Shown here: piece by piece, positions 11,501 through 53,150 of the stretch
Layout of the letters: each line of letters opens with the position of its first letter
How positions within the stretch are numbered: the stretch's first letter is position 1
DNA from: Auanema rhodensis
Taxonomy: Eukaryota; Animalia; Nematoda
Assembly: GCA_964057225.1 (NCBI GenBank)
Contig: OZ059896.1
Span: 8,804,001-8,868,000 of the forward strand
Length of the DNA: 64,000 bases
Direction of reading: 5' to 3'
The notes under the pieces: generated by a model
Databases searched by the model: none
Seen by the model: only the letters and a program-made list of their open reading frames with translations
Told to the model about the DNA's origin: nothing
Position numbers and translations under genes: made by a program

Positions 11501-14500
11501 TTCATCTTGTCCGCTCTTGAATATGTTGGAACAGTTGGCTTGAATGGAAGTTCCTCCTTCTCCGAAACGATCTTCTCAGAATGATCATCAGCTTTTCCTT
11601 CTTCATTATAAACAGTGGTAGTTGTTGTTATTGTTGTTGTAGTCGTCGTTGTCATACCATCTTGACGGTTAGTAGCTTGTAAAACTTGACGTGTTGTTGT
11701 TGTTGTTGTTTTCGAATCGGATGTCATTGGAGCATTTGATTCAACAGATTTACCTATTGAAGCACAACTATTCTCTTTATCACCAGGAGATTCAACTATA
11801 GGCGACGGCTGAAAGTATAATGTACTGAAGTTGTTGAAGATTCAATAGAAACTAACCGACACACATATTGGTTCCATACTAAACGAAACACTCAATGGAA
11901 TTTGATTTCGTTTTTCAGCTTTCAGAACAACTTCATTAGTAGGTTTACTAAAACAAAGTTTTATAATAATATTTTAGTTTTCTTTAATTAATTATATGAA
12001 ATTTTTAGTTTTTATAGCTTAATTGAGAAATTACTGATTCATTAGTTAAAGTCATTTCAACTTCAATTTAGTCTCATCGAAACTCATCAATCAGTCCTAG
12101 CTAAAGCATCTAGCACGGCTGCTTCTCTTGAGTTCAATTCATCATCAATTGGCAGGAAAGGAACTATCAAACCAAAGTTTGAGTTTGACCAACTCCCATG
12201 AGACAAACTGCAGGAATCACTCCCTCCTTCTAACGCTTTCTCTCTCTCTCTCTCTCTCTCTCCTCTTTCACTATTGTTATCTATCTTTCTTGCAATACAT
12301 ACATACATATGAATGAATGAATATATCTCAATTGTTTTCCCGAAGATTTCTGATCATTTCAAAATACATTTAATTTAATTAAAATTTTGTGTTTGAAAAA
12401 TGTTTTTCTACTTTTCTCACCTTTCAACTATTTCCAGGACTTCATTTTCTGGTGTTTGTAAAGTTGACACAGGGGACATTGTCATTTCTGATTCAATGTC
12501 CTTTGATTTCTCCATAGATTCAACTTCCTCTACAATAGCTTCTGATTCTATAAGAAGAATATATAAAAATATATTTGATTTCTATTCAAATATACCATTT
12601 GATGATTCAACTACTTGAAGCTTCTGCTGTACAATTGTTAAATCATTATTTTTCAGATGATTATCATATTGTGACTCATCATCACTAAATAATGGTTCAG
12701 GATTCTGTGGAATAATAACCTAAAATGAAAAAATTAAAGTTTTTATTCAAAAATTTAATCTTACTTTTGATGTTGATGGAAGATCTGATGATAACTTTAC
12801 ATCCATTGATGATGATTTGATGACACGATTAGCATTCTCATCTATTCTTTTTGGTGGAACTTTACTCTTTGGTGTTGGCCGAAAACTGGAAAAAAAAATT
12901 TTTTTTTATCATCGTAAACGAATTTCATATAACGAACCCAGAAAAGCTTTGACTTGTCTTAATGGAATTGCTACGTTCAGTTGAATTTGATCGACTTCTT
13001 ATTCGTGTCAGCTTCGATAACTTATTTCGAACTGAATGAGCAACGCTCATCAAGGGGCTCAATGGAGCTGATGGGTTGGAAGCCGAAGATTTTTCTATTC
13101 CTGATTTTGATGTTCCCATGGTATTTCCTCGTTTTTCCCGACGACGACCTCCACTGGCTGCAGTTGTTGCGCTGACGTTGTTATTAGAAACGTCACAACT
13201 ACTTGGAGTATTAGCAGTAGTATTATTAGTACTCAATCGAGGAATCTGCAAAAATAAAGATTTAAAAGGGTGAAAAATAAAATTAAAATCATGGCTGATG
13301 ATCAAAGTTTTTTGAGAAAATAATTAAGGAAAAATCCTCCTGAAAAGCTTTTCAAAGTGCAATTTCAAGTTTTAAGTTTAATATTAAGTTTTAAATAAAA
13401 TAATTTTTAAATATAAGTTATATAATGATAAGCAGCGATTGAATAAAATATTTTATCTATACGATTAGAGTCATAAAACGAATTCTAATAGTATATTCTG
13501 AATATGTCATATATGTATATGCTTTAATCCACATGCTATGACTATGACATCTTTTGAATAGCTTTCACCCATCCATCCACTATTTCTCTTTCTAACAATT
13601 CTCATTGCTCTTTCTTTGTCTCTAAGTCAAATTAACTATTCATATAACTATTTTAACTAGAAAAGAATTATATAAAACTTTCAAAAAAAAAAACTAAATT
13701 TTTCATAAAATTATGAGAATATTTGCTTTATTTAAGGAATTGCTGTAAATATAATCTAATTTTATGCAAATAAAATGCAAAAAAAAGATAAAGATGCTTG
13801 AGAATATATAGAGAAATAGAAAATTCTAAAATATAAAAAAAGATTTTCAAAAAAAGCAGAAAAAGTAATTTAAAATTGGAATAAGAAGGAACGAAATAAT
13901 AATTATAAGAAAGATATACATATGTAGATTCCAATATTAAAACTTAGAATTAAAGAAAAATTATATGAAATATCCAAGATTTGAGAATATCCAAGGCTTA
14001 TTCTTTAAAAGATTTCAGACAAAAATAAGGAATTGAATAACATAAGAAATCTTTGAAAGGTTTTCTTTTGTTTTTGATATCAGCGCTTGTCTCCACATGC
14101 TTGATTTGAAAAAAAAATGTTTCTCAAGCTAGAATATGCACAATGCAATCAATAAAGTTTTTTCCAGGATTTAGTTGTCACATCCTTCTTAGAAAGAAGT
14201 GAAGAAAAAAAAAGTATTTGAAATGAGGAGATGAATATAAGAATTTTCTTATAAAAATATATTTTTAAAGTTTTTTTTAGCTAAAATAATATAAATGATA
14301 TAGTTAATTAATAAAATATTTGTAAAATACAAAAATGAATACTGCTGAGCTGAATCAGTCTAGTGGATGAAAATTCGAAAGGCTTCCGATATAGACAATA
14401 GAATAGAGGGTGGTTTTCAGGGAACAAACGGCACTTGGCATCTAGTCATTTATATCTGAATTCATCCCTCGGGGTTACAGATTCGCGACACGACGAAGCT

Positions 14501-46319: not shown

Positions 46320-49300
46320 ATGTCTTGTTCTCGGATGGGATTGAAGCATATCTATTTTTTAATAGGTACTTATTAGTTTTTTTATAAAATCTTCTATTTC
46401 CTATTTTTAGCATTGCATTGTTATGGAGTATTGGGACAGCAAAGTTGTGATGTAGAAAATTTTAAAAATACATCTTATAAATTGAGTATTTTAGATAAAT
46501 AATTTGGAACCACCTTTACGTTATGCGTTCACTGGTTGTCAATACACAGGAAGCAGCTTGAACAATGGCTGTGAAATATCTTTAAGTTGTGAAACAGGTA
46601 CTGAAGATAAGTTGATCTTAGCAAAAGTAAATATTTACAGGATTCATGCCTACATCACCCATGCCCTTGATGACTTCAGGAGGAATACAAAAAATACATT
46701 GCTCAAATGGCAAATGGCTTTCAATGTCCAACGCAGTTAACATTTTTTGTACAAAAGGAAACATAAAAATTTAAAATTCAGGAAGTGAGAGTTATGCAGT
46801 GCGTTGAAGGATGTTTGAGGCGAAATTATACAACTGAGATAGTAAACAGCGAAAGCATGTATTCTTATTTCGACCCCGATACGGAAAAGTCTTATTCAGC
46901 TGTATGTAGATCAACAGGTTAGATGTTTTAAATAATGTATTTACAATTTTCTGTTGAAGTTGTCACCAAAATAGAAGATATTGTGAAAAATAATCCGGGA
47001 ATTTCTCACTATTACTGTCCCATCTCACCTGAAGACGGAAAAGTAAATAGTGGTGGATGTGAGAACATTTGCACTATGACATATTCAATTCCGAGAGGAA
47101 GTAAAATTATAAAGGTTTTTATACAAGTCGTAGATTCTTGTTGAAATTCGATATTCAAGCATTTTATTGAGCTCAGTCCTGATATGTTTATGTATACATT
47201 TGGAGGAATGGAAATGATAGTTGGATGCGAAGAAGGATATGCATATGATCCAAGCAATCTCTATGCTTCTTATGGGCAACAAGTCATTGAATGTGATGGA
47301 ATTACAGCGAAGCTTATGGATAAAGTAACTGGAACTGAAGCTGTGATAGCCCAATGTGTTCCACAACAAAGTTGCCCAGAATTTATCCCAGTATTAATCA
47401 AATACATTGCCAGGCTTTACATTTTTTTTACAGTCGGCTGATTCAGTTCTTACCTCGGAAAGTACAGAGTGTTCATCACGTAACGGCCTGGTTCCATCCG
47501 GATGTATTCGATCTTACGAATGTTCAAAAGGTATTATGGTAATAATTGTGAACAAGTTTAACTATTATATAAAGGGTATTATCCTTCTTCTATGGAGTAT
47601 TTATACAATCGAACACAAAGAGTAAGATGTCAAAATGGTACATGGTACGATCAAAGAAATGCTACTATTACTTGTGTATGCTTAATATAGAGTTTTCTAA
47701 TATATATCGTTGGTTTTTCAGCCCCTAACATGCACTGCTGGATGTGTTAATCTCAATTATGACTCCATCGTAAAATATTTGCAGTCCAATAGCCACCAGA
47801 TTACATATGACGAATTTGATAGCGGTGATGGCAAGAAGTTCCATTGTTTAACAAGTTTGAACTCTTATTTGTACATATATATTTAAAATTTAAAATTTAG
47901 GCAAATCTCGTACAGACATTACGCAATTTATTGAAAAAATCCAGAAAGAGGAAAATCATTACTTCTGTCGTAACACCGAGTTAAATAACAAAACTTATAT
48001 TGTGATTGAGATGGAATGTTTGAACACTTGCCAAGCTCTCCAAATTACAAATTTGCCTCCTGGAGTGGAGCTTATTAAGGTTATTCAAATATAATAACTA
48101 AGCTGACAATATAATTATTCTGTAGAGCCCTAAGTCATTTGAAGTTTTCGGTTCTTCTTTAATTGCTGGGCATTCGTCCTATGACTTCCAATGTCAATCA
48201 GGATATCAATACATCAATATTGATCTTCGAAATTTTGGAAAACAACGATTCACTTGCCTCGGGAATAACAGTTATACTGAATTGTTTTCCCAGTCAGCAT
48301 TTGAAGCCCAGAATATCGAATTCAGTCAATGTCAAAAAGTAATATCAATTGATTTATGATGAACATTACATAACACTTGAAGGTCTCCTCTTGTTCACTT
48401 TCGGATATAACAAAGGAAGAAAATGTCATAATCGTCAATCAAACTTGTGTTGGCTCCGGCGATATAAACTGCGAAGTTACTTTAACCTGCGCTCCTGGTA
48501 TATTTTCTATCATGGGCTTATTATTACATATATTGCTACAGGATTTTATCCAACTTTAACACAATTCCAAACAACTCGTTCGATTCGGAAAACTTGTAAT
48601 ATAAATTCAGTTGGAGTTGCTCAATGGATTGAAGTGGTATCTGGTTCACCTGATCCATATCAATGCGTTGAAGGTTGTATTGAACGACCATCTGAAACTC
48701 AAGTAATTATCCACAATGGAACAGAAATAGTTTGCTGTATATACAAAATAATAGTTATTTTCTTATCAATACTTTTCCAGCTCTAACTTCCTCTGGAAAT
48801 GGTAATCCATTTTATTGCAATTCTGGCAATTCAACAAATGATTATAAATGCACTCGAACTTGTTACCCTCTCGGAATTGCAGAAAATCTCTCTAAAAAAA
48901 ATCTTTACGTAAGTTCCTAAATATTAAAAAGTGTGTCAATTGTATTTTTATTTTTTTGCTTACAAACATATAGCATCAATTTTTATTTTAGAGTACTCTA
49001 ATCCTGGACCGATTTGTAGCTGAAGGAGATGGTTACATTGTGTCATGTCAAAATCGTAAACATAATAATTTTCCTTTTTAATAGTACAGTTTTTATTTAG
49101 AATATGTTTTTCGAGAAACAAAAACCAACAGCAAGGAGTATCGCTGTAATGGAAAAAACAATTATATTGACGTCAGTACGAATACAGTAACCAACTATGC
49201 TACAGACACTTGTATCCTAGAGGTATGATCTAACTTTTCAACTATTTTATAAGACTTTGTTAAAACTTTTAGACCACTAATACGTGCTCTGGCAATCTTC

Positions 49301-49750
49301 CAGTAATTGACAATTATACTTCTCGAAAGCTCAGTTGCGTAAAAGATGCAAATAACCGTTTTGCTCCCGGGTGTCTCGTTGAAATAGAATGCTTGCATGG
49401 TACGTCTCATTACTGAGTGTAATAGTCTGAATACAAACTTTTAAGGAAGCTATTTTTCTTCAAAGTCAACAGAAACCGTTAGGAATTATGTTTGCCAAGA
49501 AAACGGTTTATTTATGAATGTTGCTACTAAAGCTGAAATAAGTGTAATCAACGATCAATGCCGTATGTTCGATAATCCAACCACAAACCCTACTCCTACA
49601 ATCCCTACAACAACGAGTAAGTTCTGTTTTTTTCTGTATTTCATAATTTATGTTCACTGTTCCTCGTTTCATGTTTTGTGTTCTGTGTCTCTAATCTATT
49701 CAGAAAAAAATTTATTAATTATTAACAAAAAATTGAACCGGAATGTTTAA
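46320..49750 (+). CDS. Secreted cysteine-rich protein with repeated sushi/CCP-like modules; family not identified
   Basis: Hydrophobic leader across exons 1-2; three recurrences of SC...C...C-x5-C-x-x-G...C...W...C-x-[EA]GC, each followed by a second Cys module; many ~40-nt introns; T/P-rich end. Exon boundaries approximate. Confidence 0.7.
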
Positions 49751-49844
49751 AACTACACGATGGAATACGCAAGAGGAGGAACGAAATTATGTTTCTTTAC
49801 GATAAGCCACAGAATCAAATCTTTGCATCAGGAGTGAACCACGT

Positions 49845-52400
49845 CTAGTACAGCCTTTTCTCGAATCTTAAAAATTGGATAAAAATAAATCATTTCTTCT
49901 ATGATATGGTATAAATATAGATATAGACAATAGAAATAGGGTGACGATTTTGTGCATATTGTGCCACATCACTACAATTTCTCACCCCCAATAAAAAGAC
50001 CTGGGGTGGTCTGATGAAATAAAAAGTTGTCGGGTTCTATGCTGTAAATTTTTCAAGAACGATAAAGTGCACGATGATTGTTATTAGTATTTTCTTTTCG
50101 GTTTGTTTAAAAATATGCATAAACTTACGAATGAAGAGAGTGGACTCCTCCCTCTGCTTGAGCATTAGAAGAACGCTGCTCGAAACGAACATTACCAGCA
50201 CTAACACCGCAGCTAGAAAAAATTAAAAATTATAGAAGCGAGATATTGGACTAACTGGAGGTCTTCAAGTGATTTAATACCAATATCTTGGAAACCATGT
50301 TGAACACCTCTAATGAGATATGGAATAAATTTATGGCAAGATCCACGATCTTTCATAGTAGCAGATACACCTTGAGCTACTTTGATTTGATCTGATTCTC
50401 TATAAATTTTTCATCAGGTGCCTTATATTGTCTTAATCATACGCAGTAAAATATCTATCCTGGCTAGATGTGTGCGCTTCCATGGCATCTAGTGATCCCA
50501 TTCCTCTGTATTTTTTCACACGAACGCCCGCAGGACCCCAGAAATATTCTCCAGGAGCCTAAAACAAAATGATCAATGATTCACTAACAAAAACTTGAAT
50601 TATCTGATTCGATATCCTGCTAAAATTTCTAAATATTTTTTTAAACAAACTATTAAACTAAGTACGCAAATAAAAAAAGCATACATTAGTTTACGATTTT
50701 TCTCTAAACTGATGCATCTACGATTTCGCAGTTCAAAATCGGGGAAAACCAAATTTGACACATATTTAGATATAAATAATCAAAAAATATGTAAAATCAT
50801 ACTTCAGTTGTAGCAGCTAAAAGGCCTCCCATCATCACGACCGATGCTCCAAGAGCGACAGCTTTGGTAATATAACCAACATCACGAATACCTCCGTCAG
50901 CGACGACTGGAATACCCCGGGAACTGGCATAGTGAGCTACATGATAGACAGCTGTTGCTTGAGCTCTTCCGACAGCCATAACTGCAATCATATTCAGATA
51001 ATAGTTTTCCGTCCAAGAACAGCTTACTATCTTGAGTGATGCAAATAGATCCACTTCCCATACCAACACGCAATCCATCAGCTCCAGCATCAATAAGACA
51101 TTTAGCTTGCTGCCTGGTTACAACTATAAAAATAAAAATCTCAGACTAGTTCTTCTTGAATGAATTCAAGGAATAGCTTAAACATACCATTTCCAGCGAT
51201 AACATCAACTTGAGGGAAGGTGTGCTTTATATACTTAAGCATATCAATTTGATAAGAAGAGGTTCCATTAGAAGAATCCTAATAACGCATATATAAGCCG
51301 ATTTGGAGGATAAAGACTTACAATCACAATTACATCAACACCGGCTTCCACTAGTAATGCGACAGTTTTCTTGCTTGTTTCCTTGGTGTTGACAGCAGCA
51401 CCGCATAAAAGCTGTCCCTTTGAATCATATGAAGCCATTGGGTAATCGCGTGCCTATATAAGCATTAATTGCGATTTTAATCTTATTTATGCTCTCACCT
51501 TCAATAAATCAGCGCGACATAGCAGAGCAATTAATTCTCCATTATCATTCACAATTGGTAATTTTCCTAATAGATGAAATGCAAACCTAATATTTTAAAA
51601 AATCTGACTTACCTAATCTATTTTGCTTCAGAATTTGTTGAGATTTTTCCAAGTCATCCTTGATATTTCCCAAGATCAAACTGTTCACACTGACCATAAT
51701 CTTTAAAAAAATTTATGATGTAACTGATACGGATGACTTTGAATTTTACATCAGTAACGGGAATTTGCTTCTGTTTGTCCACGTCATTTTCGAAAAAGTC
51801 AAAATCTCTTGAGCTGATCATTCCAAGAAGTTTTGATCCAACTTTTCCAGTTTCAGTAATTGGAGCACCGGTATATCCAAATTTTTTTTTAATTTGAATC
51901 ATATCATATACAGTGTCATCAGGACGAAGACAATGAGGCTGCATTACAAATCCTTGCTTAAATCTCTGCAACAATAAAAAAGACTAAGAAAGTCTTGCTG
52001 GAGGCTAACCTTGACTTTCAACACTTCAGCAGCTTGGTCTTCTGGATTGGCAAAGTTACCGTGAATAAAACCGATACCTCCATAAAGCTTTAAAAAAATA
52101 GAAATCATATTTTTGAAATAAGATCTTACAGCCATAACAATAGCCATTCCAGATTCAGTGACAGTATCCATAGGTGAAGAAGCTAGAGGAGCTTTAATTG
52201 AGATATTTTTAGTAACCTTCGTATCCAGTTTCACATCATGAACAGAAAAGTCGATGAATCCAGGCAAGATGTTGAAATCACTTCAATATCCAAAATATAT
52301 AACACCTTGGAGTATGAGCCTACTTGTATGTGATTCCTGAGGTGCTTACCATGAGATCTTTTAGAGACTGGCCATCTTTAAGATCAGAATCAAAAACCAT
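49845..52400 (-). CDS. IMPDH: Inosine-5'-monophosphate dehydrogenase
   Basis: GITYN|[24 protein letters not shown] pair, [41 protein letters not shown]|FEKRLY*. Confidence 0.98.
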
Positions 52401-53150
52401 TTTTACGATATTCGGTGGAACGATTTCTTAAGAATAACATGTGAAAAGTTTATAAAATTTAATACAAAACAGAAAATAATGAAGATTTTAAGGCATACGC
52501 AAACATTGGAAAGCAAATGCAAATGCAAGAAATTTCAGCAAGATAAGTTTAGGTTTCAACGACACAGCATTTTGTCGGTGCAAAGAGCGCCATCAAAGCT
52601 CTGATATGAAATGGCAAAATTCTGTTTCTGCAGCAAACCATTAGGATCCATGTTATGATTTAAATGGGCGGAGTCAACAAAGATGGCGCAAGATATATCC
52701 AGATAACTAACGTGAGCGTTTGAAGACCTGAAGAGTCTTCCAAGACTACGCATGCAATCAATATAAGACAATAGTAAAAATACAAGAATTTTGAACTTCG
52801 TAGTACATTAAACAGCTGCATCAAGTGACAACTAAGTTCGACTTTATCATAGGAACAACTAAAATCAAGACAATCAGTAAATGACCTAGCGACATCTTTC
52901 TATCAACACTGAAGGTGTACTAACATTTTGATGTCACAAGCAAACATCTTATATTTCGCTAACTGCGCTTATCAGCTCGTTAAATAAAATAAGATAAGTC
53001 TCAAAGACCTAATTGCTACCCTTATCAAGTAAAGATTAACAGTAAATAGCCCTAATTATGAAAAAAACTTGAGCAAAAAAATCGCTGAGGATGGCCGATT
53101 AGTTTGCACTAAAACCATTCATTGAAATAAAATAAATTTCATGGACTTCA

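What the first reader, a model, noticed from the sequence alone, without database searches (positions are those of the whole stretch)
49787..50128. IMPDH cassette exon paralleling the human retinal IMPDH1 C-terminal extension
Seen: the last intron (49867-50128) is about 6x longer than typical here and contains tttacag|56 nt (50041-49986)|gtgag. Inclusion replaces FEKRLY* with [44 protein letters not shown] (44 aa, stop 49787-49789); reading through the donor gives ...GLFIGGEKL*. Known: human retinal IMPDH1 includes 17-nt exon 13b at the equivalent HS|YEKRLY junction, shifts to the same frame (both lengths are 2 mod 3; both tails contain GCT from the RLY codons) and is less sensitive to GTP inhibition. 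Inference: convergent or ancient splice control of IMPDH feedback and filament behaviour. The donor also lies in a hairpin (CACCCCA...TGGGGGTG).
Basis: partly seen in the sequence, partly recalled or inferred. Interest (0 to 1): 0.8.

Follow-up and report, generated by a model that had tools for sequence, protein, structure and literature searches.

The report
Conserved alternative tail exon in nematode IMPDH
The long last intron of this nematode's IMPDH gene holds a small frame-shifting exon that is used at a low level, is conserved as coding sequence in the sheep parasite Haemonchus contortus, and swaps the enzyme's last six residues for a 44-residue tail, much as the vertebrate retina does with IMPDH1.

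Summary
The claimed donor hairpin is no more stable than shuffled sequence.

The exon is used. Spliced contigs of four RNA runs of this organism confirm all 13 introns. One run joins 49986 directly to 49866. Contigs of two other runs end exactly at 50041, the predicted acceptor.

The exon is conserved. H. contortus has an annotated 550-residue IMPDH product made by a 74-nt cassette, also 2 mod 3, in its last intron. The two tails share an S-I-[ED]-P start and a TRRxS..RF[DN]SVA end. Past the canonical stop, codon positions 1/2/3 are identical at 7/13, 11/13 and 2/13 sites, which marks the shifted frame as coding.

C. brenneri has a similar unannotated 50-nt candidate and Diploscapter an annotated short alternative tail.

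No similarity to fish retinal tails was found, so I read the parallel as convergent. Effects on GTP feedback and filaments are untested. I found no paper on this. Verdict: a real new variant of a known kind.

The parts
49692..52400 (-). IMPDH gene: ATG at 52400, 14 coding exons, 513-residue canonical product, mRNA 3' end about 49692-49699
   Evidence: Spliced RNA contigs confirm all 13 introns. The frame was checked locally. Exons hit Pfam PF00478 and PF00571. The in-frame exon pieces are 93.8% identical to Auanema sp. JU1783 IMPDH P0301.
50129..50212 (-). Penultimate coding exon, ending ..GGVHSLHS with the Ser codon split (phase 2)
   Evidence: Reading through its donor gives TCG TAA, an immediate stop after HS.
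49867..50128 (-). Last intron of the canonical mRNA, 262 nt
   Evidence: The joint 49866>50129 is present in all four runs at contig depth 51-130.
50042..50128 (-). Upstream sub-intron (87 nt), removed when the cassette is included; acceptor context cttgaaaaatttacag
   Evidence: Contigs of runs X3 and X4 end exactly at 50041, as expected for an assembly-graph branch at the acceptor. The acceptor context resembles the one in H. contortus.
49986..50041 (-). 56-nt cassette exon (2 mod 3), encoding I-E-P-D-N...F-I-G
   Evidence: It is the only candidate in the intron that starts S-I-[ED]. The counterpart in H. contortus is 74 nt, L007:13037-13110.
49867..49985 (-). Downstream sub-intron (119 nt), donor G|GTGAGA
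   Evidence: A contig in run X1 joins 49986 to 49866, skipping 119 nt with GT..AG on the minus strand, depth 5.8 against 50.7 for the main joint. In X3 and X4 this stretch is retained in the contigs that start at 50041.
49845..49866 (-). Canonical end of the coding sequence: FEKRLY plus TAG (49847-49845)
49787..49866 (-). Same exon read in the shifted frame after cassette inclusion: 25 more residues, stop TAA at 49789-49787
   Evidence: The stop lies inside the mRNA, which ends about 49692.
49805..49849 (-). Conserved block of the alternative tail, [15 protein letters not shown], containing an RRxS basophilic-kinase consensus
   Evidence: It aligns to H. contortus TRRPSAVL-RFNSVA with 10/19 identities, E = 1e-4. 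Identity by codon position is 7/13, 11/13 and 2/13, with 7 synonymous-different codons and none identical; Fisher p = 0.0012.
49711..49716 (-). AATAAA polyadenylation signal
   Evidence: Read. Contigs end 12-19 nt downstream, at 49692/49699.

Best explanation
This is a conserved, alternatively spliced, frame-shifting cassette exon in the last intron of IMPDH, in an Auanema-type rhabditid nematode.

Most mRNAs splice 50129 directly to 49866 and end in FEKRLY. A minority use the acceptor at 50041 and the donor at 49986. Because the cassette is 56 nt (2 mod 3), the last exon is then read in a second frame that runs 57 nt past the normal stop. The hexapeptide FEKRLY is replaced by a 44-residue, basic, probably disordered tail. 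The tail starts I-E-P-D and ends in the conserved block TRRxS..RF[DN]SVA.

Shown: the exon is used, and its shifted frame is under protein-level selection between this species and H. contortus.

Inferred: by analogy with vertebrate IMPDH1(546), losing the C-terminal Arg (R511 here, R512 in human) and adding a floppy tail would destabilise the compressed, GTP-inhibited octamer. That would make this isoform less sensitive to GTP feedback. The conserved RRxS would offer a phosphorylation handle.

The stated confidence of 0.6 covers the whole statement. I put about 0.85 on the exon being real, used and coding, and about 0.35 on the GTP-feedback effect.
For: 1. Usage. The contigs match the window at 99% or more with no differing letters and are spliced at all 13 introns, so the runs are RNA of this organism.
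- Run X1 has a contig joining 49986 to 49866 (GT..AG on the gene's strand) at depth 5.8, against 50.7 for the main joint.
- X3 and X4 contigs (49863-50041 and 49860-50041) end on the exact predicted acceptor base.
- The other long intron (244 nt) has zero coverage in all four runs, so this is not general pre-mRNA or DNA background.

2. Conservation.
- H. contortus locus tag V3C99_009482 has two NCBI products. P0163 has 512 residues and ends FEKRLY. P0166 has 550 residues and carries a 44-residue alternative tail.
- Its cassette, L007:13037-13110, is 74 nt, also 2 mod 3, and has a similar acceptor and first codons.

3. Coding signature.
- In 13 aligned codons beyond the overlap with the canonical stop, identity is 7, 11 and 2 of 13 at codon positions 1, 2 and 3.
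- No codon is identical, 7 are synonymous-different and 6 change the residue; Fisher p = 0.0012.
- BLASTP of the two tails gives E = 1e-4.

4. Further relatives.
- A metagenome contig of a relative, L002, shows tcttacag|AATCGAAGGGG (S-I-E-G) about 90 nt after the donor, just before the contig ends.
- C. brenneri has gattcag|AATAGAACAG..GCAG|gtattt, 50 nt, 93 nt after the donor.
- Last introns are long in all five rhabditid loci read: 262, 1127, 361, 1382 and 686 nt.

5. Analogy. Papers state that IMPDH1(546) replaces five C-terminal residues with 37 mostly unstructured ones, loses the E510/R512 contacts across the octamer, and is less GTP-sensitive. AlphaFold2 on P0166 gives pLDDT 24-35 for residues 499-550.
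Against: - Inclusion is low: contig depths of about 3-8 against 50-130. Contig depths are poor measures.
- The donor joint was assembled in only one of four runs, and all four runs come from one study.
- The acceptor joint 50129>50041 was not among the joints the tool listed, so it rests on contig end points.
- In X3 and X4 the contigs that start at 50041 run on unspliced through the cassette donor. That form would give a shorter tail ending GGEKL*.
- Only two species carry the long conserved tail in my data. In C. brenneri, D. pachys and M. belari the shifted frame of the last exon stops after 8-11 codons.
- C. elegans has no annotated alternative C-terminus among the products listed.
- No protein-level evidence and no biochemical test exist here.
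- The tail had no alignment depth in the structure prediction, so its low confidence is expected anyway.
Confidence: 0.6

Rival explanations
1. What matters is removal of FEKRLY rather than the particular tail. Several routes through the long last intron all delete the C-terminal hexapeptide: donor read-through giving HS*, use of the 50041 acceptor without the second splice giving a 22-residue tail, and cassette inclusion. The added residues would be largely dispensable.
For: - Donor read-through gives TCG TAA. Auanema sp. JU1783 has an annotated 507-residue product ending HSLHS beside the 513-residue one.
- X3 and X4 contigs run unspliced from 50041 into the last exon, and X1 and X2 have unspliced contigs across the cassette.
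- D. pachys has an annotated alternative exon with its own stop and a 12-residue tail, in both gene copies.
- The C. brenneri candidate tail lacks the conserved block.
Against: - The codon-position pattern and the shared RRxS..RF[DN]SVA block show selection on the tail sequence itself between Auanema and Haemonchus.
- Many database models ending in HSLHS are probably gene-prediction artefacts caused by a missed 22-nt last exon.
Confidence: 0.2
2. The cassette is regulated unproductive or non-coding splicing, and the conserved stretch after the stop codon is a 3'UTR regulatory element, not protein.
For: - Inclusion is low.
- There is no peptide evidence.
- The middle of the cassette is not conserved in sequence or length; BLASTP found no alignment.
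Against: - A UTR element would not concentrate differences at third codon positions: 2/13 identical there against 11/13 at second positions.
- Both cassettes keep 2 mod 3 and an open frame, and both tails are 44 residues.
- The alternative stop lies downstream of the normal one in the last exon, so the mRNA is not an obvious decay target.
Confidence: 0.1
3. It is a cryptic exon: splicing noise in an unusually long intron, with the H. contortus annotation being an equally noisy transcript model.
For: - Depth is low and the donor joint appears in one run only.
- AG...GT pairs are common in AT-rich introns.
Against: Independent noise would not produce all of the following in two genera whose IMPDH is only 79% identical:
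- the same acceptor context and the same first codons;
- the same length class;
- a shared tail motif with synonymous substitutions.
Confidence: 0.07

Closest known systems
Vertebrate retinal IMPDH1 C-terminal splice variant: human IMPDH1(546)/(595), zebrafish Impdh1a (Burrell et al., bioRxiv 10.1101/2021.08.03.454821; PMC9022972; PMC8688572)
   Same: - An extra small exon late in the gene changes the reading of the end of the coding sequence.
- The last 5-6 residues (EKRLY / FEKRLY) are replaced by a 37-44 residue, predicted unstructured extension.
- The C-terminal Arg that bridges the compressed octamer in human is lost.
- The canonical form remains the major one in bulk RNA.
   Different: - There is no sequence similarity between nematode and fish tails.
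- No N-terminal extension was seen here.
- The Glu (E510 in human) is kept, as E or D, in the nematode tail.
- The nematode tail has its own conserved RRxS..RF[DN]SVA block.
- Tissue specificity, GTP sensitivity and filament effects are untested.
- Identity of the intron position in vertebrates was not tested here.
H. contortus IMPDH product XGW30556.1 (P0166, locus tag V3C99_009482, assembly GCA_041937105.1)
   Same: - Same gene and same last intron.
- Cassette also 2 mod 3, with the same S-I-[ED]-P start.
- Same shifted frame of the last exon, 44-residue tail, and shared TRRxS..RF[DN]SVA end.
   Different: - The cassette is 74 nt rather than 56 nt and lies 708 nt rather than 87 nt into a 1127-nt intron.
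- The middle of the tail is unrelated in sequence.
- The tail ends right after SVA, whereas the window adds YRKET.
- It is filed only as 'hypothetical protein'. I found no paper describing it.
Diploscapter pachys IMPDH 'isoform A' models (PAV63076.1 and PAV72507.1)
   Same: An alternative exon in a long last intron (1382 nt) follows the same HS junction, starts with Ile and replaces FEKRLY.
   Different: - The exon carries its own stop and gives only 12 residues.
- There is no frame shift into the last exon and no RRxS..RFDSVA block.

Membership tests
IMP dehydrogenase (eukaryotic, with CBS/Bateman insert) | IMPDH catalytic barrel domain (PF00478) | tested here: met
   Exons 50803-50979 and 52130-52279 hit PF00478 at E = 1e-19 and 1e-13.
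IMP dehydrogenase (eukaryotic, with CBS/Bateman insert) | CBS pair inserted in the barrel | tested here: inconclusive
   Exon 51750-51965 hits PF00571 at 21 bits, below the 24-bit cut-off for this single exon. The orthologue P0166 passes at 48 bits, and the window pieces are 93.8% identical to Auanema IMPDH P0301.
IMPDH1(546)-type C-terminal extension isoform (vertebrate retina) | Extra exon late in the gene whose inclusion shifts the frame of the last exon | tested here: met
   The 56-nt cassette is 2 mod 3, and the junction 49986>49866 is present in RNA.
IMPDH1(546)-type C-terminal extension isoform (vertebrate retina) | Last five or six residues replaced by a 30-45 residue unstructured extension | tested here: met
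   FEKRLY is replaced by 44 residues. The H. contortus counterpart has pLDDT below 36 across the tail; that low value is expected without alignment depth.
IMPDH1(546)-type C-terminal extension isoform (vertebrate retina) | Extension homologous in sequence to the vertebrate one (Y-x-F-[VL]-P-F-T...) | tested here: not met
   BLASTP of the P0166 tail against a fish IMPDH1a tail aligns only the shared GVHxLHS core. The tails are listed.
IMPDH1(546)-type C-terminal extension isoform (vertebrate retina) | Same intron position as the vertebrate extra exon | not tested
Fish tails diverge right after HS-Y, which is compatible with the same position but is not a test.
IMPDH1(546)-type C-terminal extension isoform (vertebrate retina) | Reduced sensitivity to GTP feedback | not testable with these tools
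   This needs enzyme assays. The vertebrate data come from the papers read.
IMPDH1(546)-type C-terminal extension isoform (vertebrate retina) | Cell-type-restricted expression (photoreceptors) | not testable with these tools
   Only four bulk runs kept as contigs were available. X1 shows relatively more cassette signal than X2-X4, but the samples are coded.

The most novel reading that the evidence does not exclude
An alternative C-terminus switch for IMPDH is ancestral to a large part of the rhabditid nematodes. It would be a cassette about 90 nt into the last intron, starting S-I-E and 2 mod 3 in length, seen here in Auanema, a metagenomic relative, Haemonchus and as a candidate in Caenorhabditis. 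It would produce a feedback-resistant, phospho-regulated (RRxS) enzyme in cells with high GTP/cGMP demand, such as cGMP-signalling sensory neurons. That would be an independent re-invention of the vertebrate photoreceptor solution.
Probability: 0.15. Interest if true: 0.8.

Novelty: new variant of a known kind. Interest (0 to 1): 0.62.

Why it matters
IMPDH sets the flux into guanine nucleotides. The only well-studied case of splice-controlled tuning of its GTP feedback is the vertebrate retinal IMPDH1, whose mutations cause blindness.

A second lineage uses the same trick: a frame-shifting micro-exon in the last intron that swaps the C-terminal residues for a floppy tail. Because the tail sequence is unrelated, this suggests the C-terminus is a general evolutionary handle on IMPDH regulation.

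It also offers genetically tractable free-living nematodes in which to study what such tails do. The conserved RRxS..RF[DN]SVA block is a concrete, testable element.

There is an annotation consequence too. Many nematode IMPDH models end prematurely at HSLHS, and the alternative isoform is missing almost everywhere.

Tried and rejected
- Hairpin at the cassette donor: not more stable than shuffles, so dropped.
- Literature. No paper in the library holds IMPDH1 together with 'exon 13b'. No paper was found on nematode IMPDH isoforms.
- Single-exon search of the representative library: mostly fragments. It gave the leads P0001-P0006.
- Contigs of relatives.
  - L001 is too short.
  - L002 ends 20 nt into the putative cassette.
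  - L005 comes from a GC-rich organism without a last intron.
  - L006 comes from an unidentified organism with short introns; it has a 48-nt last intron and no cassette.
- A global alignment of P0006 with all exon pieces (A1) was misaligned and discarded. A smaller one (A2) was used as the profile instead.
- Region search with the H. contortus tail: it found only itself. Tails as diverged as the window's share too few exact 5-residue words for this search to find them, so the blank only shows that no closely similar tail is annotated elsewhere in that collection.
- Degenerate DNA pattern for FEKRLY-TAG-A in metagenome contigs: 92 hits, none next to an IMPDH exon. All were chance matches.
- P0003, P0005 and P0162 had no encoding contig on record, so the Auanema sp. 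JU1783 locus could not be read.
- The MAFFT alignment of the cassette regions of five species is informative only for the window against H. contortus.
- Joined sequences. No search or fold was run with a joined (spliced) protein of the window. Exons were sent one by one, by reference. Joining was done only inside local scripts, to check frames and translate tails.

Full report
**The observation**

The IMPDH gene lies on the minus strand, with its ATG at 52400.
- The penultimate exon ends ..GGVHSLHS at 50129, with the Ser codon split.
- The last intron is 50128-49867 (262 nt).
- The last exon encodes FEKRLY, with the TAG stop at 49847-49845.
- Inside the intron, tttacag precedes a 56-nt stretch (50041-49986) that is followed by gtgag.
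- Inclusion reads HS plus 44 residues and stops at 49789-49787.
- Reading through the cassette donor gives ..GGEKL*.

The other introns are 42-64 nt, apart from one of 244 nt; the median is 45. The proposed hairpin at the donor is no better than shuffled sequence (z = +0.56).

**Is the exon used?**

One search found four runs of one study that hold the stretch. Laid on 49000-53000, their contigs match at 99% or more with no differing letter. They are spliced at all 13 introns with GT..AG on the minus strand. The runs are therefore RNA of this organism.

- The canonical joint 49866>50129 has contig depth 51-130.
- Run X1 also has a contig joining 49866 to 49986 (skips 119 nt, GT..AG on the gene's strand, depth 5.8). 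This is exactly the predicted cassette donor spliced to the last exon.
- In X3 and X4, contigs of 179 and 182 nt span 49863/49860 to exactly 50041.
- A contig of an assembly graph ends where paths branch. An end on the predicted acceptor base in two runs therefore implies both a spliced and an unspliced path there.
- The joint 50129>50041 itself was not among those listed; the tool withheld two joints.
- X1 and X2 also have unspliced contigs over the cassette.
- The 244-nt intron has zero depth in all four runs, so the signal in the last intron is not general background.
- Contigs end at 49692/49699, 12-19 nt after an AATAAA. The alternative stop therefore lies inside the mRNA.
- Inclusion looks low, a few percent to roughly a tenth, and relatively higher in X1. 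Contig depths are crude measures.

**Whose gene is it?**

- Single exons hit Pfam IMPDH and CBS.
- A representative search with the 72-residue CBS exon gave fragments of relatives.
- A profile of an Aphelenchoides IMPDH plus window exons given by reference (A2) then retrieved the nematode IMPDHs.
- The in-frame exon pieces are 93.8% identical to Auanema sp. JU1783 IMPDH, which also has 513 residues. They are 78.7% identical to H. contortus and 77.3% to C. elegans.
- The window is therefore from an Auanema-type rhabditid.

**Conservation**

H. contortus has two NCBI products under one locus tag. One has 512 residues and ends FEKRLY. The other has 550 residues with a different 44-residue end.

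On its locus L007 the penultimate exon ends at the same HS junction and the last intron is 1127 nt. A 74-nt exon (13037-13110, gttacag|CATTGACCCC..ATGG|gtaggg) is annotated, and the last exon is then read in the shifted frame up to TAA.

The two species compare as follows:
- Both cassettes are 2 mod 3, and both tails have 44 residues.
- The acceptor context and first codons are alike: cttgaaaaatttacag|CATAGAACCCGAC against cttgacgttacag|CATTGACCCCGTA.
- The middle of the tail differs in sequence and length; BLASTP found no alignment.
- The part encoded after the canonical stop aligns [15 protein letters not shown] with TRRPSAVL-RFNSVA, 10/19 identities, E = 1e-4.
- In the 13 aligned codons beyond the overlap with the canonical stop, no codon is identical, seven differ synonymously and six change the residue.
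- Identity is 7/13, 11/13 and 2/13 at codon positions 1, 2 and 3; Fisher test of position 2 against position 3, p = 0.0012.

This is the signature of a translated frame under purifying selection, not of a UTR element or of noise.

**Wider distribution**

| Source | Last intron | What is seen |
|---|---|---|
| L002, metagenome contig of a relative | incomplete | tcttacag\|AATCGAAGGGG (S-I-E-G) about 90 nt after the donor; the contig ends there |
| C. brenneri | 361 nt | Unannotated candidate, gattcag\|AATAGAACAG...GCAG\|gtattt, 50 nt (2 mod 3), 93 nt after the donor. The shifted frame of its last exon stops after nine codons and lacks the conserved block |
| D. pachys | 1382 nt | Annotated alternative exon in both gene copies, starting with Ile, with its own stop (12-residue tail) |
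| M. belari | 686 nt | Only weak candidates |
| L006, unidentified short-intron organism | 48 nt | No cassette |

- C. elegans products in the cluster (534, 522 and 338 residues) all end FEKRLY.
- A region search with the H. contortus tail found no other annotated protein.
- Replacement of FEKRLY through the long last intron thus looks widespread in Rhabditina. The long conserved tail is shown only for Auanema and Haemonchus.

**A side effect of the donor**

Reading through the donor gives TCG TAA, so HS is followed at once by a stop. This explains:
- the 507-residue second product of Auanema sp. JU1783;
- the many nematode database models that end at HSLHS.

**Mechanism**

Shown: a minority mRNA includes the cassette, and the shifted frame is coding.

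Inferred from papers on vertebrate IMPDH1:
- In IMPDH1(546), five C-terminal residues are replaced by 37 mostly unstructured ones.
- E510 and R512, which bridge protomers in the compressed GTP-inhibited octamer, are lost.
- The variant is less sensitive to GTP. Zebrafish keeps the extension.

In the nematode tail:
- The equivalent Glu is kept (E, or D in H. contortus).
- The Arg becomes Asp (Val in H. contortus).
- A floppy basic tail is added. AlphaFold2 on P0166 gives pLDDT 24-35 for 499-550, though that is expected without alignment depth.

I therefore consider reduced GTP feedback the most likely effect. The conserved RRxS would be a candidate phosphorylation switch, and RF[DN]SVA a docking element. 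None of this is tested.

**Relation to the vertebrate exon**

Fish retinal-type tails (Y-x-F-V-P-F-T...) show no similarity to the nematode tail. I could not test whether the intron position is the same in vertebrates. I read the resemblance as convergent design rather than shared descent. The isoform should not be filed as a member of the vertebrate retinal variant family.

**Limits**

- There is one study and only contigs, with no raw reads.
- One junction is direct and one is inferred.
- The long tail is seen in two genera only.
- The caps on reads, protein searches and locus look-ups are exhausted.
- No search or fold used a joined protein of the window. Joining was done only in local scripts, to check frames.

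**Verdict**

This is a real and conserved alternative C-terminal isoform of nematode IMPDH. It is so far visible only as an unnamed gene model in one species and is not described in the papers searched. It is a new variant of a known kind, and its function remains open.

Noticed in passing
window 52419-53000 and beyond (towards 53500): Unspliced RNA contigs of 1.0-2.8 kb at depth 17-91 cover the roughly 1-kb stretch between the stop of the upstream gene (about 53500, minus strand) and the IMPDH ATG. This could be a very long 3'UTR of the upstream gene, a separate non-coding RNA, or an operon-like spacer.
   Followed up: no
window 49000-49620: There are low-depth RNA contigs downstream of IMPDH. 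They include a 45-nt intron, 49056-49100, with GT..AG on the plus strand (run X4). This points to a weakly expressed convergent gene.
   Followed up: no
window 50126-50131 and database models P0162, P0280, P0290-P0292, P0294: The last-intron donor read in frame is TCG TAA. Any gene model that misses the 22-nt last exon therefore ends at HSLHS. Many nematode IMPDH entries (Ancylostoma, Necator, Cooperia, C. nigoni, Auanema sp. JU1783) end this way.
   Followed up: partly
L003 (QFQM01000822.1 of GCA_003243255.1): A 1140-nt contig filed under a Flavobacterium psychrophilum metagenome-assembled genome carries an IMPDH piece 79% identical to this window's exon 12. It looks like eukaryotic, probably nematode, DNA binned into a bacterial genome.
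   Followed up: no
window 50559-50802: The second long intron of the gene (244 nt) has no RNA coverage in any run and no internal GT[AG]AG donor. It served here as a negative control. Why it is long is unexplained.
   Followed up: partly
L010 5710-5750 (Mesorhabditis belari): The shifted frame of the last IMPDH exon ends in ..STKDEL*, an ER-retention-like ending. This is probably a coincidence. A 35-nt candidate cassette (attag|ATATTC..TATAG|gtgagg) lies 63 nt into the 686-nt intron.
   Followed up: no
P0155 (C. japonica, UniRef A0A8R1EUE5): A 72-residue IMPDH fragment model continues after HSLHS with RRSQLKPALP instead of FEKRLY. It may be another alternative or mispredicted C-terminus in a Caenorhabditis species.
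   Followed up: no
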